DNA of 64,000 nt from Octopus sinensis (taxonomy: Eukaryota): assembly GCF_006345805.1 (NCBI RefSeq), contig NC_043010.1:24862001-24926000 (forward strand), read 5' to 3'. The translations under genes and the position numbers were made by a program. Shown piece after piece: positions 1,019 to 58,785 of this stretch; within the stretch, counting starts at the first letter, position 1; each line of letters starts with the position of its first letter. The notes under the pieces were generated by a model. The model saw only the letters and a list, made by a program, of their open reading frames with translations, did no database searches and was not told where the DNA came from.

Positions 1019-2039
1019 CCCATGAATTCGCTTTCAATAAATCAATGCATGGCAGTTGTGAAACATTACTACAACTACAATGGAAGACAATCCTTGAACG
1101 CACGCCGTCTGGCGGAGGATTTTGATATTAACTCGTCCCATGGAAAAAACATGCATTAGATTATCAAGAAATTTGAAACTACAGGGTCGGCAGCCACTGT
1201 AAAATAAAACGTCTGGTCATTCATAAACGGCTACGAATGAATCTAAGGCTGAAGGAACTCCACAAAAGTCAACTCACCATTTATCTGCAGAGATGGGAGT
1301 GAGCCAGCCAAGTGTTATGTGTATGCTTCACAAAATGGAAACCTTACATTCCACACTTACTGCATGCTGTTCAGGATGAAGATGATGACCACCGTCTTCA
1401 ATTTTGCGTAGAGTTCCTGGCTAAACTTGTTAGAGACGCATCAATGTTTAACAGTATCTTGTGCTCAGATGAGGCTTGTTTAAAATTCAATGACACCACA
1501 GGCACAACTGTATCTATTAGGCTGAGGGGAACTCAAAAGTGACGGTTGATAAGGAAGTGAACTTACCTGGTGTGACAGTTTGGGCAGCCACACCTTCATT
1601 GGGAATAATTGGTCCTTCTTTATGTGAGAGAGTTTTCAATGGGGTCAGGTAATTGGATATGTTTCAAACCTTCTTTTGGCTCAGGATACAAGATCAAAAC
1701 TGTTATTTCCAGCAAGATGGAGCCTCCACCTCATAATGCACAACATGCACGTCAGTGGCTTGAGAAAAACTTTCCTGGAAAGTGAATCGGATGCTGCAAT
1801 CCGACTGAGTGGCCGGCACGCTCCCCAGACCTCACACCGGCATATTTCTTTTGGAGGGCGACCCTTAACGACCTTATTTATCGTGAAAAACCTTGTACTA
1901 TTCAGGAATTGAAATTTAAAATTACTGAAAAGTTTGAGGAAATTTATAATAAAATCTTCAAATGCGTGTGCCATACTGTGCCTGCTCAGTTGCACTTGTA
2001 CATTGATCACGAAGGAACACGCTTTGAACATTGTAAGTA
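1019..2039 (+). mobile_element. Degenerate Tc1/mariner-superfamily transposase (DUF4817-type N-terminus, DD41D-like spacing)
   Basis: Fragments IIKKFETTGS, KWKPYIPHLL, ILCSDEA, QQDG(A)PPH, EWPARSPDLTP and GTRFEH, with stops and frameshifts. About 41 residues separate the QQD aspartate from the (decayed) third catalytic position. TIRs not identified. Confidence 0.8.
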
Positions 2040-9799: not shown

Positions 9800-11530
9800 C
9801 AAAATAAGCAACAAGAATATCCAGAGGTAATGCAGTACGATCGTTTCATGCAACTCCATTTAATTGAACAATGCAATCATTACATCAATTTAAAATAATG
9901 CAGAGCAATCTTCAGCTGCACAAAGATATAGAATTTAATTAAATTAGAACATATGGACACATTAGTATAATTATACCTAAAATCTCCAAGAAGTTAAGGA
10001 GATAGACAAAGAACATGTTGTCTCAATCCAGTTTAGAAGTTACTGAATTTTCCAAGAAGATATACATTGTTATAGATTCTGCCTGTCACTGATTTTTGTT
10101 TTTATGGGGTCAGTTTTAATTCATAGACTAGTTTATCAAATCCCTTGTACCTCTAAGGCTGATAGAACAGAGGGTAGAATCAGGCTGAGGGAGCAAACAT
10201 CATAGTTTGTATTGTCATAAAAATCAAGATTTATTAGAAGCAATATCATGAGGTTTGGTAAAGGAAAACTTAAAACGAGATGTTAGCTGATAATTAAGTG
10301 GTCACCCACCAGCAGACTATTGATAATGAAACAGGGAAAGTCTTATCATGAGGTACTATAGTTAAATATTTTAAACAATGCTGCTATATTGTATACAGTT
10401 AAAGTTTAGGGTTTTTCAAAGGATTATTAAGAAGAAGAATTATAACAAAAGGATAGAAATTTATGAATACTTTTGAGTATATATCAAACTTTTACCACAA
10501 TAGAGGGAGGAAAAGAAATTATATAGAAATAGTTTAATATTTCTACATATTGCATACTTAAATAATAATTCATCAGATGGTACCTGTGAATATTGATTAA
10601 TTGGTATATACTGGTATTAATAAAGCAGTATTGAGGTAAAGGAACATGCTAGTTATATATTAATAAAATTATAATCTAAGCAGTATTTTTTATAAGTAGT
10701 GAATATACCGGTATAGGTTTATATAAGCTAAGTATGAAGTTATAGAGATACAAAAATTAGATTAATTTTATAAATAAATAAATGCTAATTATAAACTAAT
10801 AAAGAAATAAAATAATCAAGTAGGGCAGAACACTATGGAAAAGGAAATAAAATAGCGTAATTACTAATACTATGGTTAAGTATATGTGGCTTATTAACAC
10901 AAATAGAGAAGCTTTTTAGAAAAAGTATAATAATTCAAAATATATTAGATTAAAAATTATATATTTGCTTATTTTGATAATATCAATAAAAGACTGATGT
11001 CTGGTGTCTGCTAAAGGAATATTTAAGTTATGGAACAATCATATGTTACACTAAACTTTTCTTCTTTTTTTTTGAAACTAAGGGTTATATTATACTTTGA
11101 AGAAATTATTGTTACTCCCTACATGATATTTATAGTTTCTTAGTGGTATGTGTTTAGATGGGTTATTTATATAAAGGCCCTTATAAATACTAAGATCAGG
11201 AGGGTAGAGCCATTTAAGAAAGAGAAAAATCAAATAATTTCTAAAGATCATTTCAAACAATATTGTCTTATGGTATAAAGTTAAAATTTTGGGTAATCAA
11301 GAAGATTATTAAGAATGAAATTTTAACAAAATGATAAAACTTCTTTGAATATTTTGAGTATATACCAAATTTTTACCACAATAGAGGGAGGAAAAGAAAA
11401 TTGCAAAGAAATAGTTTAATATTTGTTTACTTATTACTTACCTAAATATTAACTTATTATATGGTTTCTATGAAGATTGATCAATTGGATTTAACTGGTA
11501 TTTAATAAGGAAGCAACTGAGCAACAATAT
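9800..11530 (+). mobile_element. Highly decayed Penelope-like element remnants (tandem partial copies)
   Basis: RT-thumb-like IPKISKKLRR..KEHVVSIQFRS (~9980-10050). GIY-YIG C-terminal-like IVLWxKVKILG.xEDY (~11260-11310). Direct repeat of the ...TTTTACCACAATAGAGGGAGGAAAAGAAA... block at ~10390-10545 and ~11270-11425. Confidence 0.6.
9830..9921 (-). ncRNA. Candidate type I hammerhead ribozyme
   Basis: Minus strand reads TGCAG-CTGAAGA-[61-nt imperfect hairpin]-GAAAC-GATC-GTA-CTGCA. Stem I is a perfect 5 bp, and stem III is the palindrome ACGATCGT. Confidence 0.7.
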
Positions 11531-11533
11531 ATA

Positions 11534-11571
<38 letters not shown>

Positions 11572-11581
11572 CAGACAGAGG

Positions 11582-11652
<71 letters not shown>

Positions 11653-16192: not shown

Positions 16193-16321
16193 ATGAATAG
16201 AGGCTTTTTAATTTTTAAATATCTTCGCTATTTATCTTCTCTTTTAATATTGGTATCAAACACTGGATTAATTTCCAAAGCTGAGGAAAGAATGGTAACA
16301 CATATAGGTAATCTTTGCGAG
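16193..16321 (+). CDS. Putative coding exon 1 (signal peptide) of secreted AA15-LPMO-like / Cys-rich / mucin protein
   Basis: ATG at 16193 directly follows a pyrimidine-rich ...TTTTCGCCAG. Translates MNRGFLIFKYLRYLSSLLILVSNTGLISKA-EERMVTHIGNLCE (basic n-region, hydrophobic core, S-K-A cleavage-like site). Ends at a consensus donor GAG|GTGAGT in phase 0, compatible with the exon at 25106. Linkage to the downstream exons is inferred from phase only. Confidence 0.55.
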
Positions 16322-19071: not shown

Positions 19072-22000
19072 TCAGTAGTTTTATTTTTATAGCGTGCTTT
19101 CACTTCACTACCGAGCGCAGCTCTGTGTGCCTTGGGTATGTGCTGTGATTTGTTGTGATGCTCTGATGGTTATTGTATGGAAAGTGTTCTGCGTAGGATG
19201 TGTGCAGTGCCTAGTAGTGCAATTTTCTGTATGTTATATGTGTTTGTAAGTCCTGGTGTTTTTGTTATGTATTTGTCTGAATATTTTTTTATCATGCCTA
19301 ATGCACCTACTATGATAGGAATTGTTTGTTTTCAGGTTCCACATTCTAGTTACCTCTATTTCCAGGTCTTTGTATTTTGAGAGTTTCTCCATTTCTTTTA
19401 GAGACACGTTGTCATCTGCCGGTATTGATACATCAATTAGAAAGCATTTTTTTTCTTCATGATCTCTGACAACTATATCTGGTCTGTTGGCCTTAATTTC
19501 TCTATCTGTGTGTATCGGCATTTCCCAGAGTGTGGTTGCTTTCTCGTTTTCTGTGACCTTTTCTGGTGTGTGCCTATACCATCTTTTTTCTGTTGTTATT
19601 CCATAATGTTGGCATAGCTTCCAATGTATGTAGGTTCCAACTCTGTCATGTCTGTGAATATATTCCTTCTTAGCCAGGACTGGGCAGCTAGAGATAATAT
19701 GATTTATTGTTTCTTGTCCATCTCCACATATTCTGCAGTTACTTGTAATATTTCTTTTCATTACATGTTTTTGGTAATTTCTGGTGGGGAGGCTTTGGTC
19801 TTGTGCTGCAATTAAAAATCCCTCTGTTTCTGCTTTGAGTCCTGAGCTTCTCAACCATTGCTGGGATTTTTCTTTGTCTATTTCTTTTGCGTTTAGTTTA
19901 GTGCAGTATTTACCATGAAGGGGCTTTTCTTGCCATCGTTTTATCATGGCTCGTTGCTGTTCTATTTTTAGTTTGGATTTCATTTGTTTTATAGCTTTTG
20001 TTGTTTCTTCATCATCTTCTTTGTGTTTATTAGGTGGTATGATTTCTTGTTTGTATTTGTCAGCTTCCTTAAATACTGAGAACAGTTTTTTGTTTTGCTC
20101 GTGTTTTGCTGCTATCTGGATCAGTTTTCCTTCCTTCTGAAGTAGGTATTTTTGCAGTCCTATGGTGGTTATTTTATAGTAGTTTTCCAGCTGTATAAGG
20201 CCTCTACCACCTTCTATACGTTGTATATATAGTCTTTCTATGTCAGATTTTGGGTGATGCATCCTAGATCCTGTCATTATTTTTTTGTTTTCCTATCTAT
20301 TTTGGACAGTTCATTTCGTGTCCAGTTAAGGATATTGTAGCTGTAACTTATAACTGGGACAGCTAAAGTGTTGATACCTATTATCTTGTTTTTAGCATTG
20401 AGCTCTGTGTTTAGTATTGATCTAACTCGTCTATAATATTCTTTTTTTATTTTCTCTTTCATTTGTGTGTGTTGTGTCTTATCTAGTTCATGGATTCCTA
20501 AGTATTTGTAAGTTTGGCTTTGGTCTAATTCTTTTATTTCATTGGTTTTATCTAGTTTTCTTAACTAGTTTTCCTCTTTTCATGGTTACTTTGGCGCATT
20601 TTTCTAATCCAAATTTCATATCTATTTCTTTGGTAAATCCATGAACTGTCTTTAATAGTGTTTCCAGCTGTTTGTCATTTGCAGCGTATAGTTTTAGATC
20701 ATCCATATATAAAAGGTGGCTGATCGTTTTGCCGTAACATTTATATCCGCATCCAGTTCTATTTAGCATATCAGATAGAGGTGACAGTGCCAAGCAGAAA
20801 AGGAGTGGAGAGAGCGTGTCTCCCTGGAATATTCCTCTTCTAATGGGGATGTCTTTGGTTTTCATGAGTCCCTCTTTTGTTTGGAGGTGTAGGACTGTTT
20901 GCCATTTATTCATAGAGTGCTCTATGAATTTTATGATTGTTGGTGCTACTTTGTTAATGGCTAGTGTTTCGAGGATCCATGTGTGGGGGATGCTATCAAA
21001 CGCCTTTTTGTAGTCAATCCAGGCCATACTGAGGCCTTTCTTCTTTCTGTGGCTGTCTTCAGTTACGGCTTTATTAATCATTAGTTGATCTTTACAGCCA
21101 TATGAGCCTTTGCGGCATCCTTTCTGCTCTTCTGGGAACAGTTTGTTTTCGTCCAGGTGCTTGTTCAGCCTTTGCGATATCACTGCAGTAAATGCCTTGA
21201 ACATAGTACGGAGGCAGGTTATTGGTCTGTAGTTTTCTGGTTTTGTTGTTTCATTTGATTTGGGAATAAGATGGTTTTCCCCTTCGTGAGCCATTCAGGC
21301 ATTGTCTTGGCTCTGCTAGTATGCTGTTAAAGTTTTCAGCCAGCTTTTTGTGCATTCTGTTAGATATTTCAACCAGAAGTTGGGGATCTTGTCATGCCCA
21401 GGTGCCTTCCAGTTGCTTAGTTTTTGCAGTGCCTGGGTGACCTCTTCAGTTGTTATGGGGGTCCAAAGTTGTTCAGATGCCGAGTTTGTTATTTTGATAC
21501 TCCTTTTTTTTGGTTGTTCGTTCGCCGACCATATTTCTCTGCAGAATTCTTCCAATTCTTCTGCCGTTGGTGCTGCAGTGACTTCTATTTTATTTTTGCC
21601 CAGTTCTTGGTAGAACTTTTTGGGGTCGGAGTTGAACTTTTTGTTCTGTTCAAAGAAGCGTTGGCGTTTCTCGTACCGGCGGATCCTTTGAGCTTTGGCA
21701 AGGATATCTTGCTTCAGCTTTTCTTTTATCTCCGGCAAATCTTTTTCTGTGATGTTATATTTGCGGAGCATTTTTGTTCTCTTTTTGTTGCTCAGTAGCG
21801 TTGCTTGTTTGCTGATTTCATTAAGAATCGACAGGTCTTTTCTAATTTTTAAAATTTGTTTTGGATGTTATTTATCCACAGGGTTTGTTTGGGTGGTGGT
21901 ACTCCTGTTTGGGCGGGTTTGGGTGAGTATCCAGCTTCTTTGTGGCTGCAGTGGCTGCTGCGTATATCAAGTCATTTAGTTCAGTGATATCACTTTTTTT

Positions 22001-24451: not shown

Positions 24452-25509
24452 GCCCATGGGCGCCAACAAAAAATTCCATAAAAAGATTTATAAAAGTACT
24501 TTGTGATTTTGATGTGACTGGTTAAACAACGATAAAGCAATATGCGCCACTGTAACTTCATTTATTTTCGATTTTCTGGCTTTTATTTTGTTTTGTTTCG
24601 TTTTTGTTTGGTTATAGCTACCTTAAGAAAGTAGCTACCCGCCTGCTTCTGTATCTTCCAGACGTTTAATCAAATAAAATCGCGCCCGCTAAATCGTATT
24701 CACATGTTGAAAGGGTTAAGTATTAACCTTTTCAACATTCTGTAATCAGAATACTTATTTATTGTCTTTCTTTTCAACTAATCATACTTCATCGTGTAGC
24801 TTCGTGGTTTCGATGTTATGATAGTATATTTTTTAAAAGACATTGTTGGGTAGGTGTGAGAGGCCGGATCTGGCTGGTTTGAACATAAAACTGACAACTA
24901 GTATCGGTATGTTTTTGATCCCCATAACTTAGCAGTTCGGCAAAAGACAACGATGGAATAAGAGTACTAAGCTTTAAAGAAATAAGCAGCGGGGCGCGAT
25001 CCGTTCGACTGAAACCGGTGCTCCAGCATGGCTGCAGTCAAATGACTGAAACCCGCTAAAGACAAGAGGTTATTTCAGAACGATTTTATTTTGCTTCTGT
25101 TTCAGGTGTTCTCCACTCAAACTATTATTACACGTAATGTGACAGTTGTATATTCGGTGACTTCAAGAACACTCACATCGTCCTTCCCAGTAAAAGATAT
25201 TTATCGCTCGACTTTGAAACTTTATGTATGTCCAAGAAAAGACAACCGGACACGAGCAACGCATGCGTGCTTCTTTCAAAATCCACTAAAAGACACAGAA
25301 CTTACCTCAACCAGATCGTTTTTAGTAGCAATTTCAAAATTACCAGTAAGACTGCATTGTACTCACTGCGTACTCCAATGGATTCTGAAGAGAGGTAAGT
25401 AATGTGTTCCGATTTACATCTTATTGCGTGTCCGTTGAACATTGAAAAGATATATGGGAGAGAGAGAAAGTGAGAGAGAAAGTGAGAGAGAAAGAGAGAG
25501 AGAGAGAGA

Positions 25510-25566: not shown

Positions 25567-25930
25567 TATCATATATTCATTATATATATGCAAATGTTTT
25601 TAACAAAAAAGTTTTACTACCTAGAATGTCTACACAAGCAGACTCGCATACACATAGGCAGACCCCCCCCACACACACACACACATATATATACCTACGC
25701 TTACACTCACTCGCCCAAACGTGATCTTATCAAGTCTATAGAGGCGCCCGGTTTAGGACTATATGAGGTTGCCCATGGGCGCCAACAAAAAATTCCATAA
25801 AGAGATTTATAAAAGTACTTTGTGATTTTGATGTGACTGGTTAAACAACGATAAAGCAATATGCGCCACTGTAACTTCATTTATTTTCGATTTTCTGGCT
25901 TTTATTTTGTTTTGTTTCGTTTTTGTTTGA
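24452..25930 (+). repeat. ~155-bp near-identical direct repeat pair (24452-24610 and 25772-25930)
   Basis: GCCCATGGGCGCCAACAAAAAATTCC...TTTTGTTTCGTTTTTGTTTG occurs twice with very few differences. Confidence 0.92.
25106..25394 (+). CDS. Internal coding exon: core of AA15-type LPMO-like (chitin-binding type-4 fold) domain
   Basis: Acceptor TTGCTTCTGTTTCAG| (phase 0) and donor AGAG|GTAAGT (phase 1). Open frame VFSTQTIITRNVT...DIYRSTLKLYVCPRKD...ATHACFFQNPLKD...KLPVRLHCTHCVLQWILKR. This matches the AA15 motifs xFxLCP, TQxCxxxxxL and LPxxLxCxxCVLQW as I recall them. Confidence 0.8.
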
Positions 25931-27049
25931 TTTTTTTTACATTTGCCCATAACCTTCTCGTATATAACATGCATTTAAAAGTATCAATTAGAACAAATCG
26001 TGACACAAAAAATTATTGAAAAGCTACTACAACTCAACAGTCCACAACATTAAATTGGGGAAAATAAATTCGAAAACAACCGAGATAGGAAACAATACGA
26101 CTAAGGGGACAATAGGACTAAGGGGGCAAAACAATGCTTTGCTTTAATTGCAGCATATTTTTATGAGTATACTTCGCCAAACAGACTGAGAAATCGTTAA
26201 AAACTTTCGAAAATCTCAGTTTGTACATCAGTGACCGTAACACATACATATATACATACGCACACATATACATACATGCATGCATGCATACATACATGCA
26301 TACTTACATACATAAATACATACATACATACATGTGTAAGCGCACGCACACTGACTCACACATATGCGCACAAACAAAAAGAGCGCAGCTTGAATAACGG
26401 ACAAAGTCAACAATTGAAAAGGTTACAAGACGCAACGAAACTTTTAGAAAAATAAATAAGTAAATGAATGGAAATTTTACCGGCGTGTGTGTTAAGTTAT
26501 AAGGTACTAAAAGAGAATGACTCTCCGCAGACACAAGAGAATGACCGTTATGTTTTCCTGTAAATGTAATTATTTCCATTTTTCTTTCTATCTCTACATA
26601 CCTTTCTACTCTTTCTTACTATTTACTCTTTTATTTGTTTCAGTCATTTGACTGTGGCCATACTGGAGCAACGCCTTTAGTCGGGCAAATCGACCCCAGG
26701 ACTTATTCTTTGTAAGCCTTGTACTTATTCTATCGGTGTATTTTGCCGAACCGCTAAGTTACGGGGACGTAAACACACCAGCATCGGGTGTCAAGCGATG
26801 TTGGGGGACAAACACAGACACACAAACACATACACATACATGTATATACATATATAGGATAGGCTTCTTTCAGTTTCCGTCTACCAAATCCACTCACAAG
26901 GCTTTGGTCGGGCCGAGGCTGTAGTAGAAGACACTTTTCCAAGGTGCCACGCAATAGGACTGAACCCGGAACCATGTGGTTTGTAAGCAAGCTACTTACC
27001 ACACAGCCACTCCTACTATTATATTTTTACACTTAGCTCTTCTTTATTT

Positions 27050-34736: not shown

Positions 34737-37619
34737 AAGAAGAAGAAAGAACACCGGGGACGGAAGAGAGAACACCGGGGACGTTTAAGAGAAGAGAGAA
34801 CACCGGGGACGTTTAAGATGTAAGAAGGAAAATACAGAGCTCCGAAATCTATCCACAAACATCGAAAACAAGGACATCCTATGGAGCCAAAGATTTACTA
34901 ACAAAGAATTGGACTGTATCCGAGTAAGTAATACTAATTGAAATTTATTACTATTTTCGAAACGAAATGATGTATTTTGACTCGATATTATCTCCACCTC
35001 TAACACAACACATGTAAACATGCGTGGAACATCACGATCATCCCCAACCTCAAACACCATGTACAAAGGAACTACGAAGAAATTAAATGCCACCGATACT
35101 ATTCAACCCAAGAATAACAATCGAGCGGTACGTACATTAAACTTACAACAAAAAATGTACGAAAAACTACACGTGCGAAATAATGTGACAACAGAAATAA
35201 ACGGACCGGTACGCTACGAAAATGACGACCGTCAAAATAATGGGCCGGACGTTGTATCTCATGTCCCGCAAATAAAACCCAAAAGACGTAAATGGACACG
35301 TGAGGAATACATTTCTATCTTACACGCATACTTCCCAGCAATGCTCTACCCAAAAAATGAAAATACAACAACACATACATATAAAATATGGAAGGAAAAT
35401 AATAGAGATATAGACTTGGATACAGCAATGAACCCTAATAAATTAGCTAACGTACGAAGATACATTCTCAAAGCCAAAAAAATATCAGAAATAGAAATAG
35501 AACATTTAAAAGAAAAAATACACCAGGAAAATGTAGATAGAAGCCACACAACAATGCCCAATAATATAAACACTGAAACTGTAAAACACGAAGACAAACG
35601 CAACATTCCCAACAAACACGATGTAAACAACGAAGGGGAGCTTAATGATTATGATAATATAAAAAATAAAATAATCAAAGAACTGAAAACCACAGAGCCC
35701 AAAATGGACCACCGACCATACCTCCCAAGAATAAAAATAAACGGAATAACAACACCAATTATAAACAGCATAAACCTAGCCGTCACTGAACTAGCCACTG
35801 AAACAAAAAAAAGTGATATCACTGAACTAAATGACTTGATATACGCAGCAGCCACTGCAGCCACAAAAGAAGCTGGATACTCACCCAAACCCGCCCAAAC
35901 AGAGTACCACACCACCCAAACAAACCCTGTGGATAAATAACATCCAAAACAAAATTTAAAAAAATAGAAAAGACCTGTCGATTCTTAATGAAATCAGCAA
36001 ACAAGCAACGCTACTGAGCAACAAAAAGAGAACAAAAATGCTCCGCAAATATAACATCACAGAAAAAGATTTGCCGGAGATAAAAGAAAAGCTGAAGCAA
36101 GATATCCTTGCCAAAGCTCAAAGGATCCGCCGGTACGAGAAACGCCAACGCTTCTTTGAACAGAACAAAAAGTTCAACTCCAACCCCAAAAAGTTCTACC
36201 AAGAACTGGGCAAAAATAAAATAGAAGTCACTGCAGCACCAACGGCAGAAGAACTGGAAGAATTCTGCAGAGAAATATGGTCGGCGAACGAACAGCCAAA
36301 AACAAGGAGTATCAAAATAACAAACTCGGCATCTGAACAACTTTGGACCCCCATAACAACTGAAGAGGTCACCCAGGCACTGCAAAAACTAAGCAACTGG
36401 AAGGCACCTGGGCATGACAAGATCCCCAACTTCTGGTTGAAATATCTAACAGGAATGCACAAAAAGCTGGCTGAAAACTTTAACAGCATACAAGCAGAGC
36501 CAGAGACAATGCCTGAATGGCTCACGAAGGGGAAAACCATCTTAATTCCCAAATCAAATGAAACAGCAAGACCAGAAAACTACAGACCAATAACCTGCCT
36601 CCCTACTATGTTCAAAGCATTTACTGCAGTGATATCGCAAAGGCTGAACAAGCACCTGGACGAAAACAAACTGTTCCCAGAAGAGCAGAAAGGATGCCGC
36701 AAAGGCTCATATGGCTGTAAAGATCAACTAATGATTAATAAAGCCGTAACTGAAGACATCCACAGAAAGAAGAAAGGCCTCAGTTTGGCCTGGATTGACT
36801 ACAAAAAGGCGTTTGATAGCATCCCCCACACATGGATCCTCGAAACACTAGCCATTAACAAAGTAGCACCAACAATCATAAAATTCATAGAGCACTCTAT
36901 GAATAAATGGCAAACAGTCCTACACCTCCAAACAAAAGAGGGACTCATGAAAACCAAAGACATCCCCATTAGAAGAGGAATATTCTAGGGAGTCACGCTC
37001 TCCCCACTCCTTTTCTGCTTGGCACTGTCACCTCTATCTGATATGCTAAATAGAACTGGTCACATACATTGGAAGCTATGCCAACATTATGGAATAACAA
37101 CAGAAAAAAGATGGTATAGGCACACACCAGAAAAGGTCACAGAAAACGAGAAAGCAACCATGGTCTGGGATATGCCGATACACACAGATAGAGAAATTAA
37201 GGCCAACAGACCAGATATAGTTGTCAGAGATCATGAAGAAAAAAAATGCTTTCTAATTGATGTATCAATACCAGCTGATGACAACGTGTCTCTAAAAGAA
37301 ATGGAGAAACTCTCAAAATACAAAGACCTGGAAATAGAGGTAACTAGAATGTGGAATCTGAAAACAGAAACAATTCCTATCATAGTAGGTGCATTAGGCA
37401 TGATAAAAAAATATTCAGACAAATACATAACAAAAACACCAGGACTTACAAACACATATAACATACAGAAAATTGCACTACTAGGCACTGCACACATCCT
37501 ACGCAGAACACTTTCCATACAATAACCATCAGAGCATCACAACAAATCACAGCACATACCCAAGGCACACAGAACTGCGCTCGGTAGTGAAGTGAAAGCA
37601 CGCTATAAAAATAAAACTA

Positions 37620-37624
<5 letters not shown>
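34737..37624 (+). mobile_element. R4/Dong-clade RLE LINE with intact 5' end but internal deletion
   Basis: Closely matches the 19072-22224 copy. At ~37058 it jumps from SDMLNRTG to HIHWKLCQHY, losing YMDD, the thumb and the zinc finger. Premature TAG at 36986. The 5' end carries three GAACACCGGGGACG repeats. Flanked by (TAA)n. Confidence 0.92.
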
Positions 37625-37692
<68 letters not shown>

Positions 37693-37717
37693 TAATAATA
37701 TTAATAATAATAATAAT

Positions 37718-39147
37718 AAATACTGGACTAAACTAAACGCAAAATAAATAGACAAAGAAAAATCCCAGCAATGGTTGAGAAGCTCAGGACTCAAAGCAGA
37801 AACAGAGGGATTTTTAATTGCAGCACAAGACCAAAGCCTCCCCACCAGAAATTACCAAAAACATGTAATGAAAAGAAATATAACAAGTAACTGCAGAATA
37901 TGTGGAGAAGGACAAGAAACAATAAATCAAATTATCTCTAGCTGCCCAGTCCTGGCTAAGAAGGAATATATTCACAGACATGACAGAGTTGGAACCTACA
38001 TACACTGGAAGCTATGCCAACATTATGGAATAACAGAAAAAAGATGGTATAGGCACACACCAGAAAAAGTCACAGAAAACGAGAAAGCAACCATACTCTG
38101 GGATATGCCGATACACACAGATAGAGAAATTAGGGCCAACAGACCAGATATAGTTGTCAGAGATCATGAAGAAAAAAATGCTTTCTAATTGATGTATCAA
38201 TACCGGCAGATGACAACATGTCTCTAAAAGAAATGGAGAAACTCTCAAAATACAAAGACCTGGAAATAGAGGTAACCAGAATGTGGAATCTAAAAACAGA
38301 AACAATTCCTATCATAGTAGGTGCATTAGGCATGATAAAAAAAATATTCAGACAAATACATAACAATGTTTTTGATTCTACGGTCATTCGGAATGCTCAC
38401 AGCAGCCATATTCCTACCACTCTATGTCACGCTGGTGAGACCCATATTGGAGTATGGGATTCAAGCCTCTTCTCCTTATCTCCTCAAAGACATACAGCAT
38501 CTCGAAAGAGTCCAGAGGCTGGCTACCCGCATGGTTCATGGTCTCAAAAATTTGTCCTACGAAGAAAGGCTGAGGACGCTCGACCTTTATTCTCTTGAAA
38601 AACGCCGCCGCCGTGGTGATCTCATTCTCGCCCACAACATCATAAGCGGGAAGTGTAACCTCTCGAAGGAGCTGTTCTTCACTCCTGCTCCAGAGCGTCG
38701 GCTGCGGGGTCATTCCAAAAAGCTCTACCTGCGACGATTTCATCTAAATCGAAGGAGAGGAGCTTTCTCCGTCCGGGTTGCGGATCCGTGGAACAAGCTG
38801 CCAGACGAGATGGTGAAGATGCCGACGACCGCTTTGTTCAAAGCCTCCCTGGACCTCAAGTGGCCTGAACTCTTTACATGAACACCACCCTGTACTTAAC
38901 TCCATGTCCCCCTACATGGCCTTGCTATTTGCTTTTGAGCCAAATTAACTAACTAACTAAAAACACCAGGACTTACAAACACATATAACATACAGAAAAT
39001 TGCACTACTAGGCATTGCACACATCCTACGCAGAACACTTCCCATACAATAACCATCAGAGTATCACAACAAATCACAGCACATACCTAAGGCACACAGA
39101 GCTGCGCTCGGTGGTGAAGTGAAAGCACGCTATAAAAATAAAACTAA

Positions 39148-39211: not shown

Positions 39212-41525
39212 TTTATTATTTATTATTTATTGGCCACAAGGGCTAACAAAAATCAATTAAAACATAAAGGGACAAAACACAAGACGAAAGTTGAGCTAAC
39301 TGCCACTGAAACACTGCACACATCTGCTTCGGTTCGGAAACCTCGCGCCCGTTCTGGTCCACCAAAGACCGAATGGTCACTTTGTTACCACGCTTCGCCT
39401 CCACCACGCGGGCCCATCGAGCGGCCTTAGTGCTCTTGCACCCCCCCCCACCTACCGCTTAGCTCTGACAACGCAGCCTTCGTGTTTGGTGTCAAAGTGT
39501 TGGTCGAGGGCCAACCTAGCCGCCAACACGTCGGTTGCGATGCCTGTCTCAAGAGCCTCGTCTAGTTTTCTAACAAAATCCCGCTCTGTTTTCCTACGTT
39601 CTACAGCTAGAACCTTACTAAACCTAATTGACTCTGCTCTAATTGCTCTCTTGAGAGCAAACCACCAGTTGTTGTTGATGATTGTCCCCGTGAGCGCCCG
39701 TTTAACTAATAAACTAATCCGGTCACTGTAGGCTTTGCACGCCGTTATCGACGCGTTCAGCTTTCTAGTAGCCGGGACCCTGTCTATGTAGCCTATCTAA
39801 GTCGACCGTACAGATCACGAATTTGTGGTCAGTGTAGTCGACTAGGTGGAATTGCGGACACCCTATGCTGTCCTTATCCGCTGGCCTACAGAAGACTCTA
39901 TCTAAGTACGATCTAGACGACCCGATGCGATTAGTCCAAGTCCACATTGGCACATTCGGGTTGTCTAGTCGAAACCTGTCGGACAGCTGAAAGCGCCTGA
40001 GCAAGTTGGCGAGGCTCTTGCACCTCCTACCTATTAGATGCTCCCGTGCCCACCCGAACGAAACGTTCGTCTAAGACAGCGTTCCAATCCCCAACTAGCA
40101 CTAGAGTGCGTGACGTTCCCAAGACAACTTCAAGACGCTTGAAATAATCGGACTGCCCTGCTCCTGTCGGAGCGTAGGCAGCCAGCAGTCTGAAAGCACC
40201 GCCGTCACTACCGTCTACGTCGAGGACCATCAACTTACCTTCTGCAACCAGGAAGACTGTCCTTATTTTCAAATCCAGACCCTTCCGAAACAAAACCGCA
40301 GTACCACCACCGCTCGCTCCCGGCCGACACGGAGATAGAAATATCTCGTATCCGCCGAAAAGGGCCGCGAGTTCCTGCGGGTCGGAGAGCTTGGTTTCAC
40401 TAATGGCTGCTACATCCACTCTATGAGACCTCAGGTCGTTTAACAGGCGACCCTGTTTCCAAGGTGACCCGAGGCCTCTCACATTTATGCTACCGATTCT
40501 GAGTTTTTCCATGTTTTAAAAGATTAAGGAGAAAAAGGCTCTACTTACTGTTGTTGTTTGGTGGGGTGGCTTCCTTGTGCTTTTGCACGGGTGTTTCCAC
40601 CAGGTTTTGTAGAGTTTTTTGGGAGAAATTTCTCCCTAGCGACCCAACATCGTTTGGGAATTTCTCCTTGATTTTATTATAATTGTCTTGTGTGATTTTA
40701 AATGTAAGCATGTGTGTTGGTGGTGTGTTGTGTGTGGGTATAATAAAATCTGACATTTTTGTGTCTGTGATGTTTTTCAGGTATGTTACTAACTGTTCAT
40801 TGTTCGTGTTTACTGCTGTAACGGTGTTGGTGGTGTCTGTGTGTGTTGGTGTGTGTAGCAGTACTTGTGGAGAAGGTGTTGTTAATTGTTGTTGTTGTGA
40901 GTGCATGTTGTTGCTGTTGATGTTGGGAAGCTCAAATTGTTCGCGCAAATTGTTCGCACAACCTCTGTACTCGTAGAATAGTGGCAGTGTCCTCTATGTC
41001 ATAGAGGACAGCTGCCACTAGCCAAGATATACTTAGCTCGGGCGGCACCTGATCAATTTTAATATGTCACTCGTCGACCAAGGTATGTCGGTACGAGCGA
41101 CAAATTTTCAGTCTGCATGGGCGAAATGGCATGCTTTGTTGCTTCTCCTTCGGTAGGGAAACGAACCTCCACTGTTCCGAAACACTTCCCTCTGGTGACA
41201 TAGCTCTTTTGGCCCCATATGGGCTTTAGAGCTATTTCAAGTTGTTGTGGTGTTGCATGGGTGTGGTGTACAAAGAAGGGAACAGCCAACTGTTCTCTTC
41301 AACGACATGTTTTTCAATATGTAAGTGCATGTATTTTCAAAATGTCAATATTTCAAACTGCAATTTTACCCCTAATTGGGTAAAATTCTACCTAACCAAC
41401 TAGCTCCGCAAGGAGTTAGTCAGCTTGGCCACACAAATATCGAAATATAATTACTTTTAAACAAATTTTCAACAAAAATGGTGTAAAATTACGCAGCTTC
41501 TGGAGACACGTCCGTCCGCTTTGAA
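39210..41525 (-). mobile_element. Internally deleted Tx1-clade LINE (5' end, partial ORF1, APE, 3' tail; RT missing)
   Basis: APE 40512-39765 (MEKLRIGSINVRGL...ISETKL...VGDWN...SYLDR). ORF2 breaks near 39290 and joins a 3' tail ...TTAGCCCTTGTGGCCAATAAA similar to that of the 2987 element. The 5' end shares GGACGTG(C)TGTCTC with the 9150 end. (TAA)n on both sides. Confidence 0.85.
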
Positions 41526-41632: not shown

Positions 41633-44600
41633 CGGAGTTTTCACCGAATGCCATAGAAAAAGAGTACGTCGGTTGCATCGACCTGACAACGACGAAAATG
41701 GTTGATGAGCCCTTAAGTGAGACAACAGACTCCAATAAAAGTAATAATGTGTCAGCTATGCAGGAGCCCTTACCCTACTATTTTCCATATTATAACCATT
41801 TTGGATGCTACGGTATCTACAGCTATGTACCCGGAATTAACTATTGGTGCGCAATCAATTGTCTATACGGTTATTGCCCTTATTCGCACTGCGCCTGCAA
41901 TATACCCTGCAGTGTCAAAACAGATTATATGATAGTGCCAGGCATGTTAGAATGGTGTTACCTGAACTGTCACATGGGACACTGCCCTCCAACGCATTGC
42001 CGATGCTTAGATGAAAACCAGAGTACCCCTTCAGACAACTCGAATCCATCGAATCCACCACCACAAACGGAAGAGCCAACAACACCACCACCACCGACAA
42101 CTCCACAACCACCGACAACACCACCACCACCGACAACGCCCGAGCCACAAACAACAGCCGGCCAGACGGGAACAGGTGCTGCTCCGTTAGATTGTAGTGT
42201 GAAACCTGACTTTATAGCAATACCTGGTATGGTAGATTGGTGTGTTCTGAATTGTGGCTTGGGATTCTGTCCGGAGACGCACTGTGCATGTAAGCAGGAC
42301 ACGGTAGACACAACACTTACGCCGCCAACAACACCCACAACGCCGACAACACCCACAACGCCAACAACACCCATAACACCAACAACACCCACAACGCCAA
42401 CAACGCCCACGACGCTAACAACAACAACTCCAACAACAACACCAACAACAGCTCCAACAACAACACCAACAACAACACCAACAACAACACCAACATCCAC
42501 GCCAACAACAACGCCCACAACCACACAAACAACAACACCAACAACAACTCCAACAACAACGCCCACAACCACACCAACAACAACACCAACAAACACACAA
42601 ACAACCACACCAACAACCACACCAACAACAACACCAACAACAACTCCAACAACAACACCAACAACAACTCCAACAACAACACCCACAACCACACCAACAA
42701 CCACACCAACAACCACACCAACAACCACGCCAACAACCACGCCAACAACAACGCCCACAACCACACCAACAACAACACCAACAGCAACTCCAACAACAAC
42801 CCCCACAACCACACCAACAACAACACCAACAACAACACCAACAACCACGCCAACAACAACGCCCACAACCACACCAACAACAACACCAACAACTCCAACA
42901 ACAACGCCAACAACCACACCAACAACAACACCAACAACCACGCCAACAACAACACCAACAACCACGCCAACAACAACACCAACAACCACGCCAACAACAA
43001 CGCCCACAACCACGCCAACAACAACACCAACAACAACTCCAACAACAACGCCCACAACCACACCAACAACCACACCAACAACCACACCAACAACAACACC
43101 AACAACCACGCCAACAACAACACCAACAACCACGCCAACAACAACGCCCACAACCACACCAACAACAACTCCAACAACAACGCCCACAACCACACCAACA
43201 ACCACACTAACAACCACGCCAACAACCACGCCAACAACAACGCCCACAACCACACCAACAACAACACCAACAACCACGCCAACAACCACGCCAACAACAA
43301 CGCCCACAACCACACCAACAACAACACCAACAACAACTCCAACAACAACGCCCACAACCACACCAACAACCACACCAACAACCACGCCAACAACCACGCC
43401 AACAACAACGCCCACAACCACACCAACAACAACACCAACAACAACTCCAACAACCACACCAACAACCACGCCAACAACAACGCCCACAACCACACCAACA
43501 ACAACACCAACAACAACTCCAACAACAACGCCCACAACCACACCAACAACCACGCCAACAACAACACCAACAACCACGCCAACAACAACGCCCACAACCA
43601 CACCAACAACAACACCAACAACAACTCCAACAACAACGCCCACAACCACACCAACAACAACACCAACCACACCAACAACAACTCCAACAACAACAACTAC
43701 ACCAACAACCACGCCAACAACAACGCCCACACCCACACCAACAACCACACCAACAACCACACCAACAACCACACCAACAACAACACCAACAACAACTCCA
43801 ACAACAACACCAACAACCACACCAACAACCACGCCAACAACAACACCAACAACAACACCAACAACCACACCAACAACCACACCAACAACCACACCAACAA
43901 CAACACCAACAACAACTCCAACAACAACGCCCACAACAACGCTCACAACCACACCAACAACAACACCAACAACCACGCCCACAACCACACCAACAACCAC
44001 GCCAACAACAACGCCCACAACCACACCAACAACAACACCAACAACAACACCAACAACCACACCAACAACCACACCAACAACAACACCAACAACCACACCA
44101 ACAACCACGCCAACAACAACACCAACACCCACGCCAACAACAACGCCCACAACCACACCAACAACAACACCAACAACAACACCAACAACCACGCCAACAA
44201 CCACACCAACAACCACGCCAACAACAACGCCCACAACAACGCCCACAACCACACCAACAACAACACCAACAACCACGCCCACAACCACACCAACAACCCC
44301 GCCAACAACAACGCCCACAACCACACCAACAAAAACACCAACAACAACACCAACAACAACGCCCACAACCACGCCAACAACCACGCTAACAACCACGCCA
44401 ACAACAACGCCCACAACAACGCCCACAACAACGCCCATAACCACACCAACAACAACACCAACAACAACTCCAACAACAACACCAACAACAACTCCAACAA
44501 CAACACCAACAACCACGCCAACAACAACACCAACAACCACGCCAACAACAACGCCCACAACCACACCAACAACAACACCAACAACAACACCAACAACAAC

Positions 44601-46017
44601 TCCAACAACAACGCCCACAACCACACCAACAACCACACCAACAACCACGCCAACAACCACGCCAACAACAACGCCCACAACAACGCCCACAACCACACCA
44701 ACAACAACACCAACAACAACACCAACAACCACGCCAACAACCACGCTAACAACCACGCCAACAACAACGCCCACAACCACACCAACAACAACACCAACAA
44801 CAACACCAACAACAACTCCAACAACAACGCCCACAACCACACCAACAACAACACCAACAGCAACACCAACAACCACACCAACAACAACGCCCACAACCAC
44901 ACCAACAACAACACCAACAACCACACCAACAACCACACCAACAACAACACCAACAACCACACCAACAACCACGCCAACAACAACACCAACAACCACGCCA
45001 ACAACAACGCCCACAACCACACCAACAACCACACCAACAACAACTCCAACAACAACGCCCACAACCACACCAACAACAACACCAACCACACCAACAACAA
45101 CTCCAACAACAACAACTACACCAACAACCACGCCAACAACAACGCCCACAACCACACCAACAACCACACCAACAACCACCACCAACAACAACCACACCAA
45201 CAACAACACCAAAAACAACTCCAACAACAACACAACAACCACACCAACAACACGCCAACAACAACACCAACAACAACACCAACAACCACACCAACAACCA
45301 CACCAACAACAACAACCAACAACAACTCCAACAACAACACCAACAACCACACCAACAACAACACCAACAACAACTCCAACAACAACACCAACAACCACAC
45401 CAACAACCACGCGAACAACAACACCAACAACAACACCAACAACCACACCAACAACCACACCAACAACAACACCAACAACAACTCCAACAACAACACCAAC
45501 AACCACACCAACAACAACGCCCACAACCACACCAACAACAACGCCCACAACCACACCAACAACCACATCAACAACCACATCAACAACCACACCAACAACA
45601 ACACCAACAACAACACCAACAACCACACCAACAACCACACCAACAACCACAACAACAACAACACCAACAACAACACCAACAACAACTCCAACAACAACAC
45701 TAACAACCACACCAACAACAACGCCCACAACCACACCAACAACAACACTAACAACCACACCAACAACAACGCCCACAACCACACCAACAACAACACCAAC
45801 AACAACTCCAACAACCACACCAACAACAACACCAACAACCACAACACCAAACATCAACGCAGACATTACAACTCCTTCGCCTTTTAAACACCGACCTTAT
45901 CACAAGCAGCGACAATTTCGCAAGCGTCGGCAAGAACGATGCTTTTGCAGAAACCCTCACCTTCGTGTCCATCGTTACTCTTCTGTTGGCAAATGGCGTC
46001 GTCTTCGCTTTGTTTAG
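41633..46017 (+). CDS. Terminal coding exon: last LPMO-like strand (EYVGCIDL), 3 Cys-rich modules, ~1170-aa PTTT mucin repeat, basic tail
   Basis: Acceptor TTTTTTTTTTACTGTAG| at 41632 in phase 1 (G|CG = Ala) matches the 25394 donor. The frame stays open for 4385 nt to TAG at 46015-46017. Variation in the repeat is mostly synonymous (ACA/ACC/ACG/ACT, CCA/CCC). The ORF-track start at 41521 is an artefact of an (AAT)n tract. Confidence 0.85.
41806..42291 (+). repeat. Three 6-cysteine modules C-x8-PG(M/I)xxWCxxNCxxGxCPxxHCxC
   Basis: Copies at 41806-41898 (CYGIYSYVPGINYWCAINCLYGYCPYSHCAC), 41908-42006 (CSVKTDYMIVPGMLEWCYLNCHMGHCPPTHCRC) and 42193-42291 (CSVKPDFIAIPGMVDWCVLNCGLGFCPETHCAC). Confidence 0.9.
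42319..45846 (+). repeat. Coding minisatellite, 12-bp unit (CCA ACA ACA/ACC ACA/ACG) encoding (PTTT)n
   Basis: About 3.5 kb of tandem 12-mers, with recurring higher-order blocks marked by synonymous variants. Confidence 0.97.
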
Positions 46018-55093: not shown

Positions 55094-55094
55094 G

Positions 55095-55225
<131 letters not shown>

Positions 55226-55244
55226 AACATACATACATACATAC

Positions 55245-55570
55245 AGACAGACCTGATATAATGATTTGCAATAGAGAAGAGAAACTGTGCACGGTTGTGG
55301 AAATTAGCTGCTCAACGGATGTTAACATAAAGCTGAAGATCGGTGAAAAAGAGAACACCTATGCTGAACTATTGAGAAATCAGCAGTTACCCTATCCAGG
55401 TTACAAGTTCAGGTTTATACCTGTAATTATTGGGGCGCTGGGATATGCAACACACTGCCTAAATACCAATCTTGAGAAATTAGGCTTCCAAAACCAGAAA
55501 GGAGAAAGCTAATTCAATCCATCACTGTAACTGTAAAAATCTATAAAACTTTCCAGAAGTCTAGCATTTA
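55245..55570 (+). mobile_element. RLE-domain LINE 3' fragment (different family)
   Basis: [21 protein letters not shown]...K.GEKENTY...FIPVIIGALG, immediately after (GATA)n. Confidence 0.75.
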
Positions 55571-55962
55571 AATACGAGCATGTCTACATATGGAACTATG
55601 CATGAGAATACATACACAAGGTAACACATACAAATCTACACTTATATATATACAAAAACATCCTGTTGTTGCTGTTGAAATTCCAATAGAAAGCGGCTCT
55701 TTCTCTATTGGCAAGAAATTTTGAAATAAAACTGGACAATGACATACATTTGTGTGTGTGTGTGTGGTGTGTGTGTGTGTGTGTTTATTTCGTGTTATTT
55801 CGTGTATTTCGTGTGTGTGTATTTTGTGTATTTCGGACTCAAGTGAAGAGAACCACCCCAAATCCTTGTTATGATATCCGATGTTGGCACTGACTTGGTT
55901 CTACAGGACATAAGAGTCGTATAATGTGTAACAATAAAATCAAATCAAATAATGTTATTTTG

Positions 55963-56140
55963 AATGCATTTGGTTACGTACGTTTCTGATCACTGCATAA
56001 TAGATAAAAAGGAAATTCATCTCTAACGCAAGACATTTCAAAATATTTTGAAACATTTTCTGTGGACGATCTTGCGTAAGAAATGAATTTCCATTTTTAT
56101 CTATTGCGTAATGATTTGAAACGTACGTATTAAATGCATT
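55963..56140. mobile_element. MITE-like hairpin with ~70-bp arms
   Basis: AATGCATT..TACGTACGTTTC...ACGCAAGA versus TCTTGCGT...GAAACGTACGTA..AATGCATT. Confidence 0.75.
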
Positions 56141-56393: not shown

Positions 56394-56435
<42 letters not shown>

Positions 56436-58720: not shown

Positions 58721-58725
58721 TTTTA

Positions 58726-58781
<56 letters not shown>

Positions 58782-58785
<4 letters not shown>

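What the first reader, a model, noticed from the sequence alone, without database searches (positions are those of the whole stretch)
25106..25394. The LPMO-like domain appears to have lost its copper histidine brace (pseudo-enzyme)
Aligning on the CP motif, AA15 'N-H-x-G-x-F-x-F-x-L-C-P' corresponds here to 'I-Y-R-S-T-L-K-L-Y-V-C-P'. The second brace His is therefore Tyr (TAT, one change from CAT). The predicted mature N-terminus is EERMVTH rather than the invariant His1 (HGRL/M). In the last strand the axial aromatic position is Tyr (EKEYVGC), but the usual second-sphere Glu position is Lys. The structural cysteines and LQW are kept. Inference: a non-catalytic chitin-binding scaffold co-opted from an LPMO.
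Basis: inference. Interest (0 to 1): 0.75.

Follow-up and report, generated by a model that had tools for sequence, protein, structure and literature searches.

The report
Copper-less mini-LPMO domain on octopus mucin
The flagged exon belongs to an Octopus sinensis gene for a giant secreted mucin whose first domain is a shrunken relic of an AA15 chitin-oxidising copper enzyme that has lost its copper site, and this loss is old and shared by a whole family of neighbouring genes.

Summary
Window 25106-25394 is exon 2 of a three-exon, 1600-codon gene on the + strand (16193-16321, 25106-25394, 41633-46017). The window is Octopus sinensis chromosome CM016872.1.

The first ~125 mature residues are homologous to AA15 LPMOs:
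- The family profile matches a mollusc AA15 profile (hhalign 98.2%, E 6e-14).
- Its only significant PDB match is TdAA15A 5MSZ (E 2.6e-10).
- The last intron has the same position and phase as in a canonical snail AA15 gene.

The second brace histidine is Tyr76 (TAT, 25202-25204). His1 is not substituted. The whole N-terminal segment that carries it is deleted, as are two loops and 4 of the 10 conserved cysteines. The domain therefore cannot be a copper LPMO.

The loss is ancient, not a recent CAT>TAT change. Two flanking O. sinensis paralogs and three Argonauta hians homologs have S/D/K/T/F at that position. Brace-less AA15 relatives also occur in bivalves and a nemertean.

After the domain come three 6-Cys repeats of the insect LPMO15-1 type, which also occur on mollusc AA15 and GH18 enzymes. 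Then comes a ~1180-residue Pro/Thr mucin.

Best reading: a chitin-associated secreted mucin with a non-catalytic LPMO relic. Chitin binding by the relic itself is not supported. It is a new variant of a known kind, of moderate interest.

The parts
16193..16321 (+). Exon 1: start codon, signal peptide (16193-16282) and 13 mature residues, EERMVTHIGNLCE. Ends in phase 0 at GAG|gtgagt.
   Evidence: Paralogs P0003, P0004, P0006 and P0008 have the same short exon 1 ending ...C(E/Q/N/G).
25106..25394 (+). Exon 2: core of the reduced AA15-like beta-sandwich (residues 44-139). Starts in phase 0 and ends in phase 1.
25202..25204 (+). TAT codon for Tyr76, at the position of the second brace histidine (His91 of TdAA15A).
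25358..25381 (+). CTHCVLQW, the CxxCVLQW motif that is invariant in AA15.
41633..46017 (+). Exon 3 (phase 1 acceptor ctgtag|; stop codon at 46015-46017). Encodes the last AA15 strand, three 6-Cys repeats, the mucin domain and a basic tail.
   Evidence: The intron position and phase match those of the canonical snail AA15 gene.
41635..41685 (+). EFSPNAIEKEYVGCIDL, the last beta-strand of the AA15 fold. Tyr151 is at the axial aromatic position and Lys149 is at the second-sphere Glu position.
41806..41898 (+). 6-Cys repeat 1 (C-X13-C-X3-C-X4-C-X4-C-X-C).
41908..42006 (+). 6-Cys repeat 2 (C-X15-C-X3-C-X4-C-X4-C-X-C).
42193..42291 (+). 6-Cys repeat 3, after a Pro/Thr linker (42055-42156).
42301..45846 (+). 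Mucin domain: about 1180 residues of PTTT repeats (68% Thr, 23% Pro over the last 1245 residues, which also include the basic tail).
45847..46014 (+). Basic C-terminal tail rich in Arg, Lys and Cys.
   Evidence: The neighbouring mucin gene in L002 has a similar tail.

Best explanation
The flagged exon is the middle exon of an intact three-exon Octopus sinensis gene. The gene encodes a 1600-residue secreted, mucin-type glycoprotein.

Domain order:
- a signal peptide;
- a ~125-residue relic of an AA15 LPMO;
- three small 6-Cys repeats;
- about 1180 residues of PTTT repeats;
- a basic tail.

The relic keeps only the central beta-sandwich: the LCP...ECL pair, CxxCVLQW and the final Y-x-G-C-x-D strand. 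It has lost the following:
- the N-terminal segment with His1;
- the second brace His, which is now Tyr76;
- the second-sphere Glu, which is now Lys149;
- two loops;
- four of the ten conserved cysteines.

It therefore cannot chelate copper in a histidine brace and is not an oxidase. This is shown at sequence level; metal binding itself was not assayed.

The gene descends from a canonical AA15 gene with 6-Cys repeats (the LPMO15-1 architecture). It arose by internal deletions and the loss of one intron. It now belongs to a tandem cluster of brace-less paralogs that is conserved between Octopus and Argonauta (shown).

Inferred function: the 6-Cys repeats accompany real AA15 and GH18 chitin enzymes in other molluscs, so they probably tether the protein to chitin. 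The Pro/Thr domain would then form a hydrated O-glycan brush. The relic would serve as a stable, N-glycosylated cap or binding module and not as a catalyst. That would make the protein a functional analogue of the insect peritrophic-matrix mucins.
For: Gene model:
- Both splice junctions are canonical and in frame, and the model gives a 1600-codon ORF with a single terminal stop.
- No AA15-like ORF lies in either intron.
- Paralogs P0003 and P0004 have the same three-exon layout, with a 97-aa exon 2.

Homology to AA15:
- phmmer of the spliced domain against the PDB finds only 5MSZ (E 0.001).
- The family profile against the PDB finds 5MSZ at E 2.6e-10, with the next hit at 0.028.
- hhalign against a mollusc AA15 profile gives 98.2% probability and E 6e-14.
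- The phase-1 intron five codons after the Trp of CVLQW is identical in the Biomphalaria AA15 gene.

Loss of the brace:
- Alignment columns 1-~42 are absent.
- Tyr sits opposite His88/His91, and Lys opposite the invariant E179.
- Pfam LPMO_10 does not match the domain, although it matches the canonical relatives.

Folded and not decaying:
- The AlphaFold2 model has pLDDT 84.9 and pTM 0.79.
- Only 3.4% of comparable frames in the window are stop-free.

Family:
- The window is 100% identical to CM016872.1.
- It lies between LOC118765915 and LOC115219204, both brace-less homologs on the same strand.
- Argonauta has P0004, P0006 and an unannotated third copy that is 38% identical.

6-Cys repeats:
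- Among the relatives found, the same module is attached to PF03067 LPMOs and GH18 chitinases.
- Its cysteine spacing matches the insect LPMO15-1 repeats described in PMC9156745.
Against: - No expression data, so the splicing is inferred from sequence and from paralogs.
- No close ortholog (O. vulgaris, O. bimaculoides) could be retrieved, so dN/dS was not measured. Family members are only 21-40% identical, which means fast evolution.
- Structure searches gave only generic Ig/FnIII-like matches. The best by query-normalised TM-score in the PDB list was an AA10 LPMO (0.51), and nothing reached E <= 0.001.
- Chitin binding by the 6-Cys repeats rests on co-occurrence with chitin enzymes. It has not been tested. 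The repeat has no Pfam family and no PDB relative.
- The Pro/Thr repeat contains a short frame-slip segment (45178-45315). This could be an assembly error or real.
Confidence: 0.75

Rival explanations
1. The LPMO-like domain itself is the chitin-binding unit, a CBM33-style binder without catalysis.
For: LPMOs were first described as non-catalytic chitin-binding proteins (PMC9156745, introduction). The aromatic at the axial position is kept. Phe142 may occupy the place of the surface Tyr166 in the phmmer alignment, but that stretch is weakly aligned.
Against: The N-terminal ~45-65 residues are deleted. In AA15 they carry His1 and the surface Tyr24 (PMC9156745). The GNSWG...GCxGCG loop and the beta8-beta9 protrusion are also shortened. 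Surface positions are not conserved among paralogs. Dedicated 6-Cys repeats follow the domain directly.
Confidence: 0.2
2. This copy is a decaying pseudogene or an exon relic, and the open frame is fortuitous.
For: No protein with 50% or more identity was found in the 1.84-billion-protein library. Three word-index searches also found nothing. The family evolves fast, and the mucin repeat contains a frame-slip segment.
Against: Three exons with canonical splice sites give a 1600-codon ORF with no internal stop. Stop-free frames of this length are rare in the window (3.4%). All six cysteines, the CVLQW motif and an N-x-S/T sequon are conserved in paralogs and in Argonauta. The predicted fold is confident.
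Confidence: 0.06
3. It is still a copper enzyme. A histidine is exposed by alternative processing (for example cleavage before His37 in MVT|HIGN), or is supplied by an unseen exon, and it pairs with another His such as His96, His127 or His130.
For: His37 lies near the predicted N-terminus, and several histidines exist in the domain.
Against: None of these histidines is conserved in paralogs. No processing motif precedes His37. No AA15 N-terminal coding sequence exists anywhere in the window. Every relative with the same truncation also lacks the second His.
Confidence: 0.03
4. The resemblance to AA15 is convergent or due to chance, and the domain is just a generic Ig-like sandwich.
For: Foldseek finds only generic beta-sandwiches at non-significant E-values. 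Pfam does not recognise the domain.
Against: The profile-profile E-value is 6e-14. The only significant PDB sequence hit is AA15. The intron position and phase are the same as in a real AA15 gene. The downstream 6-Cys repeats are the same as in real AA15 proteins. A homolog in L006 is intermediate and keeps the CxVCxGD motif.
Confidence: 0.02

Closest known systems
AA15 LPMOs, especially the insect group I LPMO15-1 architecture (AA15 domain plus two 6-Cys repeats) and TdAA15A (PDB 5MSZ)
   Same: - Homologous beta-sandwich core: LCP...ECL, LP..xCxxCVLQW and the final aromatic-x-G-C-x-D strand.
- Signal peptide.
- 6-Cys repeats downstream with matching spacing.
- The last intron is conserved in position and phase with a snail AA15 gene.
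(PMC9156745; PMC5823890.)
   Different: - No His1, because the N-terminal segment is deleted.
- His91 equivalent is Tyr.
- Second-sphere Glu is Lys.
- 6 of 10 cysteines kept.
- About 125 residues against about 190.
- Below the Pfam LPMO_10 threshold.
- Fused to a ~1180-residue mucin domain.
LsAA9B, the fungal AA9 member that lacks the histidine brace (Frandsen et al. 2019, as cited in PMC10354095)
   Same: An LPMO-family protein with no copper coordination site, kept as an intact secreted protein of unknown function.
   Different: It belongs to a different LPMO family and kingdom. As far as I know it keeps the full-length fold, whereas here large parts of the fold are deleted and the relic is one module of a giant mucin.
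Brace-less AA15-like proteins of bivalves and cephalopods found here: Mytilus, Ylistrum, Sinanodonta, Potamilus and Mactra (SN[LF]LG or SGRTLG in place of TANHxG); O. sinensis LOC118766367; Argonauta GAB1605737
   Same: AA15-derived, second brace His replaced, N-terminal His absent, and 6-Cys repeats at the C-terminus.
   Different: These keep most or all of the AA15 fold (LPMO_10 hit for P0063) and have a long non-mucin linker. They are a separate lineage on another O. sinensis sequence record.
Insect peritrophic-matrix mucins (invertebrate intestinal mucin, peritrophins). From general knowledge, not tested here.
   Same: Secreted proteins that combine small cysteine-knotted chitin-binding modules with long Pro/Thr/Ser O-glycosylated domains.
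   Different: Insects use CBM14 (peritrophin-A) modules. Here the modules are the LPMO15-type 6-Cys repeats, which PMC9156745 states are unrelated to CBM14, and an LPMO relic is also present.

Membership tests
AA15 lytic polysaccharide monooxygenase (catalytic) | Histidine as the first residue of the mature protein (His1 of the brace) | tested here: not met
   The predicted mature N-terminus is EERMVTH. Alignment columns 1-~42 of canonical AA15 are absent. No exon encoding them exists in the window.
AA15 lytic polysaccharide monooxygenase (catalytic) | Second brace histidine (His91 of TdAA15A, in the T-A-N-H-x-G motif) | tested here: not met
   Tyr76 (TAT, 25202-25204) aligns with it in three independent alignments.
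AA15 lytic polysaccharide monooxygenase (catalytic) | Axial Tyr/Phe and second-sphere Glu in the last strand (Q-E-x-F/Y-x-x-C) | tested here: inconclusive
   The aromatic is kept (Tyr151), but the Glu position is Lys149.
AA15 lytic polysaccharide monooxygenase (catalytic) | Sequence homology to the family and Pfam PF03067 above the gathering score | tested here: inconclusive
   Homology is clear (hhalign 98.2%, E 6e-14; PDB profile hit 5MSZ at 2.6e-10). Pfam LPMO_10 gives no hit even at E <= 10.
AA15 lytic polysaccharide monooxygenase (catalytic) | Ten conserved cysteines forming five disulfides (PMC5823890) | tested here: not met
   Six cysteines are present in the domain (C42, C85, C98, C128, C131, C154). 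The CGG/CGxCGD and GCxGCG cysteines are only partly kept.
AA15 lytic polysaccharide monooxygenase (catalytic) | Copper binding and oxidative cleavage of chitin or cellulose | not testable with these tools
   Needs recombinant protein, with EPR or ITC and product analysis.
LPMO15-1-type 6-Cys repeat (C-X15-C-X3-C-X6-9-C-X4-C-X1-C, PMC9156745) | Six cysteines with that spacing, in tandem, C-terminal to an AA15 domain | tested here: met
   Three repeats have spacings of C-X13/15-C-X3-C-X4-C-X4-C-X1-C. The third gap is 4 residues, not 6-9. 78 aligned modules have invariant C, WC, C, C, C and C. The model is confident (pLDDT 86.6).
LPMO15-1-type 6-Cys repeat | Binds chitin | not testable with these tools
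   The only evidence is co-occurrence with PF03067 and GH18 domains. There is no Pfam family and no PDB relative.
Secreted mucin | Signal peptide plus a long Pro/Thr/Ser-rich tandem-repeat domain | tested here: met
   The N-terminus has a charged start, a hydrophobic core and SKA at -3..-1. It is followed later by 1182 residues of PTTT repeats; the last 1245 residues, which also include the basic tail, are 68% Thr and 23% Pro. O-glycosylation itself was not tested.

The most novel reading that the evidence does not exclude
Lophotrochozoans have repeatedly turned AA15 copper oxidases into non-catalytic modules. Octopods in particular have built a tandem family of chitin-anchored gel mucins from an LPMO15-1-type gene. 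In these proteins the miniaturised AA15 sandwich has acquired a new ligand-binding role, and the still uncharacterised 6-Cys repeat is a widespread animal chitin-binding module with a fold that has no solved relative.
Probability: 0.3. Interest if true: 0.65.

Novelty: new variant of a known kind. Interest (0 to 1): 0.5.

Why it matters
LPMO families are defined by the copper histidine brace. The founding AA15 paper describes the brace as conserved across the family (PMC5823890). The brace-less precedent I could trace is fungal AA9 (LsAA9B).

This locus shows an animal AA15 lineage that discarded the copper site and a third of the fold yet stayed intact. It also duplicated in tandem and was joined to a giant mucin.

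It gives three useful things:
- a natural minimal LPMO sandwich for structural work;
- a warning that hits found through the CVLQW motif or labelled 'chitin-binding type-4' in mollusc genomes (several brace-less relatives found here carry that UniRef name) are not all oxidases;
- a pointer to the 6-Cys repeat, which has no Pfam family or structure yet sits on AA15, GH18 and mucin proteins, as a candidate new carbohydrate-binding module.

It also suggests candidate matrix proteins for cephalopod chitinous tissues.

Tried and rejected
- Three word-index protein searches returned nothing: exon 2 alone, the 322-aa spliced model and the family alignment. Known relatives were missed as well, so these are tool-sensitivity failures and not evidence of absence.
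- Pfam on the exon and on the spliced domain gave only a sub-threshold zinc-ribbon artefact.
- I looked for missing AA15 exons in both introns by motif scan, by tblastn with 13 AA15 relatives and by a six-frame HMM scan. None was found.
- A weak AA15-like stretch on the minus strand at 1702-1800 (E 0.009-0.96) looks like chance once translated.
- Foldseek of the domain model against the PDB and viral libraries gave only generic beta-sandwiches below significance. LPMOs appear low in both lists: an AA10 at rank 48, and a fusolin-like protein at rank 18.
- Foldseek of the 6-Cys repeat found nothing.
The look-up of P0037 found no record.
- dN/dS was not attempted. The only available homologs are 21-40% identical, so synonymous sites are saturated.
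- I considered whole-exon loss as the origin of the truncation and rejected it. Comparison with the snail gene shows that the first and last introns are retained. The losses are therefore deletions inside exons plus the loss of the middle intron.

Full report
**What is at the coordinates**

Window 25106-25394 is a clean internal exon on the + strand. It is bounded by the acceptor ttctgtttcag| and the donor AGAG|gtaagt. It translates to VFSTQTIITRNVTVVYSVTSRTLTSSFPVKDIYRSTLKLYVCPRKDNRTRATHACFFQNPLKDTELTSTRSFLVAISKLPVRLHCTHCVLQWILKR.

- EERMVTH is at 16283-16303.
- EKEYVGC is at 41656-41676.

**Gene model**

- Exon 1 (16193-16321) starts at an ATG. It encodes MNRGFLIFKYLRYLSSLLILVSNTGLISKA followed by EERMVTHIGNLCE, and it ends in phase 0 at GAG|gtgagt.
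- Exon 2 starts in phase 0 and ends in phase 1.
- Exon 3 starts after ctgtag| at 41633 in phase 1 and runs to a stop at 46017.
- Joined, the three exons give 4803 nt and 1600 codons with a single terminal stop.
- The rest of the window holds LINE-type reverse-transcriptase and endonuclease ORFs and microsatellites.
- Only 3.4% of 288-nt frames elsewhere on the + strand are stop-free.

**Source**

Window 54746-64000 is 100% identical to the start of a locus fetched from Octopus sinensis chromosome CM016872.1 (GCA_006345805.1). The window is therefore positions 24,862,001-24,926,000 of that record.

**Is the domain really LPMO-derived?**

Pfam does not recognise it. Several other lines of evidence support the homology:
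- phmmer of the spliced domain against all PDB sequences returns a single hit, TdAA15A (5MSZ), at E 0.001.
- An exhaustive HMMER search of 1.84 billion representative proteins found 88 relatives.
- Five of those relatives share the same reduced N-terminal domain. They are O. sinensis XP_029645183.1 (P0003) and XP_036364626.1 (P0008), Argonauta hians GAB1603672.1 (P0004) and GAB1603675.1 (P0006), and a differently truncated nemertean protein (P0011).
- A profile built from the window domain, the four octopod proteins (P0003, P0004, P0006, P0008) and the unannotated Argonauta exon matches a profile of six canonical mollusc AA15 domains with 98.2% probability and E 6e-14. Three of those six were scanned and pass Pfam LPMO_10.
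- The same profile hits only 5MSZ in the PDB at E 2.6e-10, with the next hit at 0.028.
- A mollusc AA15 HMM run on the six-frame translation of the whole window picks out only this exon (E 2.5e-8).

Gene structure agrees. In the canonical Biomphalaria AA15 gene (P0015), the last intron is a phase-1 intron in the fifth codon after the Trp of CVLQW. The octopus gene has its last intron in exactly the same place and phase. In both genes the last exon carries the final AA15 strand followed by the 6-Cys repeats.

The first intron is phase 0 in both genes. The snail's middle intron, inside the H-K-G codons, is absent in the octopod genes.

**The copper site**

All alignments place Tyr76 (TAT, 25202-25204) opposite the second brace histidine. 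This residue is His91 in TdAA15A and H88 in the mollusc set.

His1 is not substituted. The octopod domains lack AA15 alignment columns 1-~42 (HGRL...CGG) altogether. They also lack most of the CGxCGD...EGGxY loop, part of the beta8-beta9 protrusion and the GNSWG...GCxGCG loop.

No exon encoding these parts exists in the introns or anywhere else in the window.

In the last strand, counting back from the conserved Cys:
- The window has Tyr where canonical proteins have the axial Phe/Tyr.
- It has Lys where Glu179 is invariant in the canonical set.
- The roles of these residues are as described for TdAA15A (His1, His91, Ala89, Tyr184; PMC5823890, PMC9156745) and for the conserved second-sphere Gln/Glu (PMC10472438).

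Six of the ten conserved cysteines remain.

AlphaFold2 with the 13-sequence alignment predicts a confident seven-strand sandwich (pLDDT 84.9, pTM 0.79). Foldseek, however, returns only generic Ig/FnIII-like sandwiches, with nothing at E <= 0.001. In the PDB list an AA10 LPMO has the best query-normalised TM-score (0.51). An entomopoxvirus chitin-binding type-4 protein appears in the viral list. The structural evidence is therefore compatible with an LPMO origin but not discriminating.

**The loss is old and family-wide**

The window gene lies between two same-strand paralogs:
- LOC118765915 lies about 40 kb upstream.
- LOC115219204 lies about 19 kb downstream.
- A further PTTT-mucin gene ends just upstream of the first of these.

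Argonauta has P0004 and P0006 about 60 kb apart. It also has an unannotated copy at L003:4632-4931, with a 6-Cys exon at about 5813-6229. That copy is the best match to the window exon, at 38% identity.

At the brace-2 position the residues are:

| Sequence | Residue |
|---|---|
| Window gene | Y |
| P0003 | S |
| P0008 | D (with a His one residue later) |
| P0004 | K |
| P0006 | T |
| Unannotated Argonauta copy | F |

The tyrosine is thus one state of an unconstrained position. It is not a fresh His>Tyr change.

The following are conserved across the family:
- the cysteines and the CVLQW motif;
- the L-P before the Cys pair;
- an N-[VIA]-[ST] sequon at the first strand.

A contig of unknown origin (L006, ENA ERZ21867824) carries an intermediate form. 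It still has CCVCPGD (compare KCGVCGD) but has Ser at the brace-2 position.

Independent brace-less AA15 relatives exist elsewhere:
- in bivalves (Mytilus, Ylistrum, Sinanodonta and Mactra with SN[LF]LG; Potamilus with SGRTLG);
- in a second O. sinensis gene (LOC118766367);
- in Argonauta;
- in the nemertean Lineus.

**The rest of the protein**

After the relic come three modules of the form C-X13/15-W-C-X3-C-X4-C-X4-C-X-C (41806-41898, 41908-42006, 42193-42291). They are followed by 1182 residues of PTTT repeats and a basic tail.

The same module occurs 216 times in the 96 protein sequences held at that point. It is attached to PF03067 LPMOs with intact HGRL and TANHxG motifs and to GH18 chitinases.

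Its spacing matches the two 6-Cys repeats (C-X15-C-X3-C-X6-9-C-X4-C-X1-C) that define insect group I LPMO15-1. [quoted passage not shown]

The module has no Pfam family. Its confident model (pLDDT 86.6) has no PDB neighbour.

**Interpretation**

- Shown: this is an intact gene for a secreted mucin-type protein, and its N-terminal domain is a copper-less, truncated descendant of AA15. It belongs to a tandem family shared by Octopus and Argonauta.
- Inferred: the ancestor was an LPMO15-1-type gene (AA15 plus 6-Cys repeats). The relic arose by deletions within exons and the loss of one intron.
- Inferred: the 6-Cys repeats tether the mucin to chitin, and the relic acts as a structural or binding cap.
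The deletions remove the segment that carries the surface Tyr24 of TdAA15A, and the position of Tyr166 falls in a weakly aligned, non-conserved stretch (PMC9156745).
- The pseudogene, hidden-exon and chance-similarity alternatives are each contradicted by several independent results, listed under the rivals.

**Comparison with what is known**

A brace-less LPMO-family protein has a precedent in fungal AA9 (LsAA9B; PMC10354095, citing Frandsen 2019). I found no description of brace-less AA15 proteins in five full-text searches, and PMC5823890 describes the brace as conserved across the family. The library is incomplete, so this absence is only suggestive.

I therefore rate the finding as a new variant of a known kind and of moderate interest.

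**Limits**

- There are no expression data and no close orthologs, so selection was not measured.
- The signal-peptide cleavage site is my own reading.
- No metal or chitin binding was tested.

Noticed in passing
window 24452-24624 and 25771-25943: A 173-nt direct repeat (96% identical, 1319 nt apart) brackets exon 2. No other copy was found in the window or in the seven fetched loci, so it looks like a local duplication and not a dispersed element. It could promote loss or duplication of the exon by unequal recombination.
   Followed up: partly
window 45178-45315: Inside the PTTT mucin repeat, the reading frame slips through the other two frames (TTNNNHTNNNTKNN..., then RQQQHQQQHQQPHQQ...) and returns to PTTT without a stop. 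This is either real indel variation in the repeat or long-read assembly error.
   Followed up: no
L002 21621-22055 (O. sinensis LOC118765915, XP_036364626.1): The RefSeq model of the upstream paralog appears to read through the exon-2 donor into the intron (tail ...GKYSQMRSLFLFLFYCLRLSEGG...). It has no 6-Cys exon, so it is probably truncated or mis-annotated.
   Followed up: partly
L003 4632-4931 and about 5813-6229 (Argonauta hians BAAFZT010000032.1): An unannotated family member upstream of GAB1603675.1. It has an LPMO-relic exon with proper AG/GT boundaries, followed by an exon with three 6-Cys repeats. It is the closest relative of the window exon (38% identity).
   Followed up: partly
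L002 586-2988: Another PTTT-repeat mucin gene (annotated product 1242 aa) ends about 7 kb upstream of LOC118765915. It has a similar Arg/Cys-rich tail, which suggests that the cluster has at least four members. Its 5' part lies outside the fetched locus.
   Followed up: no
L006 about 5478-5918 and 10001-11644 (ENA ERZ21867824 ctg105878l): A contig filed under a metagenome-type accession is clearly from an animal. It carries an intermediate AA15 relic that keeps CCVCPGD, followed by a gene part with five 6-Cys repeats (P0002). The organism was not identified.
   Followed up: no
window 3292-7857, 19234-21771, 35020-38881, 40027-40948, 52862-55358: Several LINE-type retrotransposon ORFs (reverse transcriptase, endonuclease), some in near-identical copies, fill the introns and flanks of the gene. 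Copies of the same elements (about 93-96% identical) lie in the neighbouring locus L001.
   Followed up: no
window 1702-1800 (minus strand): A short stretch, LTCMLCIMRWRLHLAGNN, weakly resembles the AA15 CxxCVLQW...GN region (tblastn E 0.009; HMM E about 1). The surrounding ORF shows nothing else AA15-like, so it is probably chance.
   Followed up: partly
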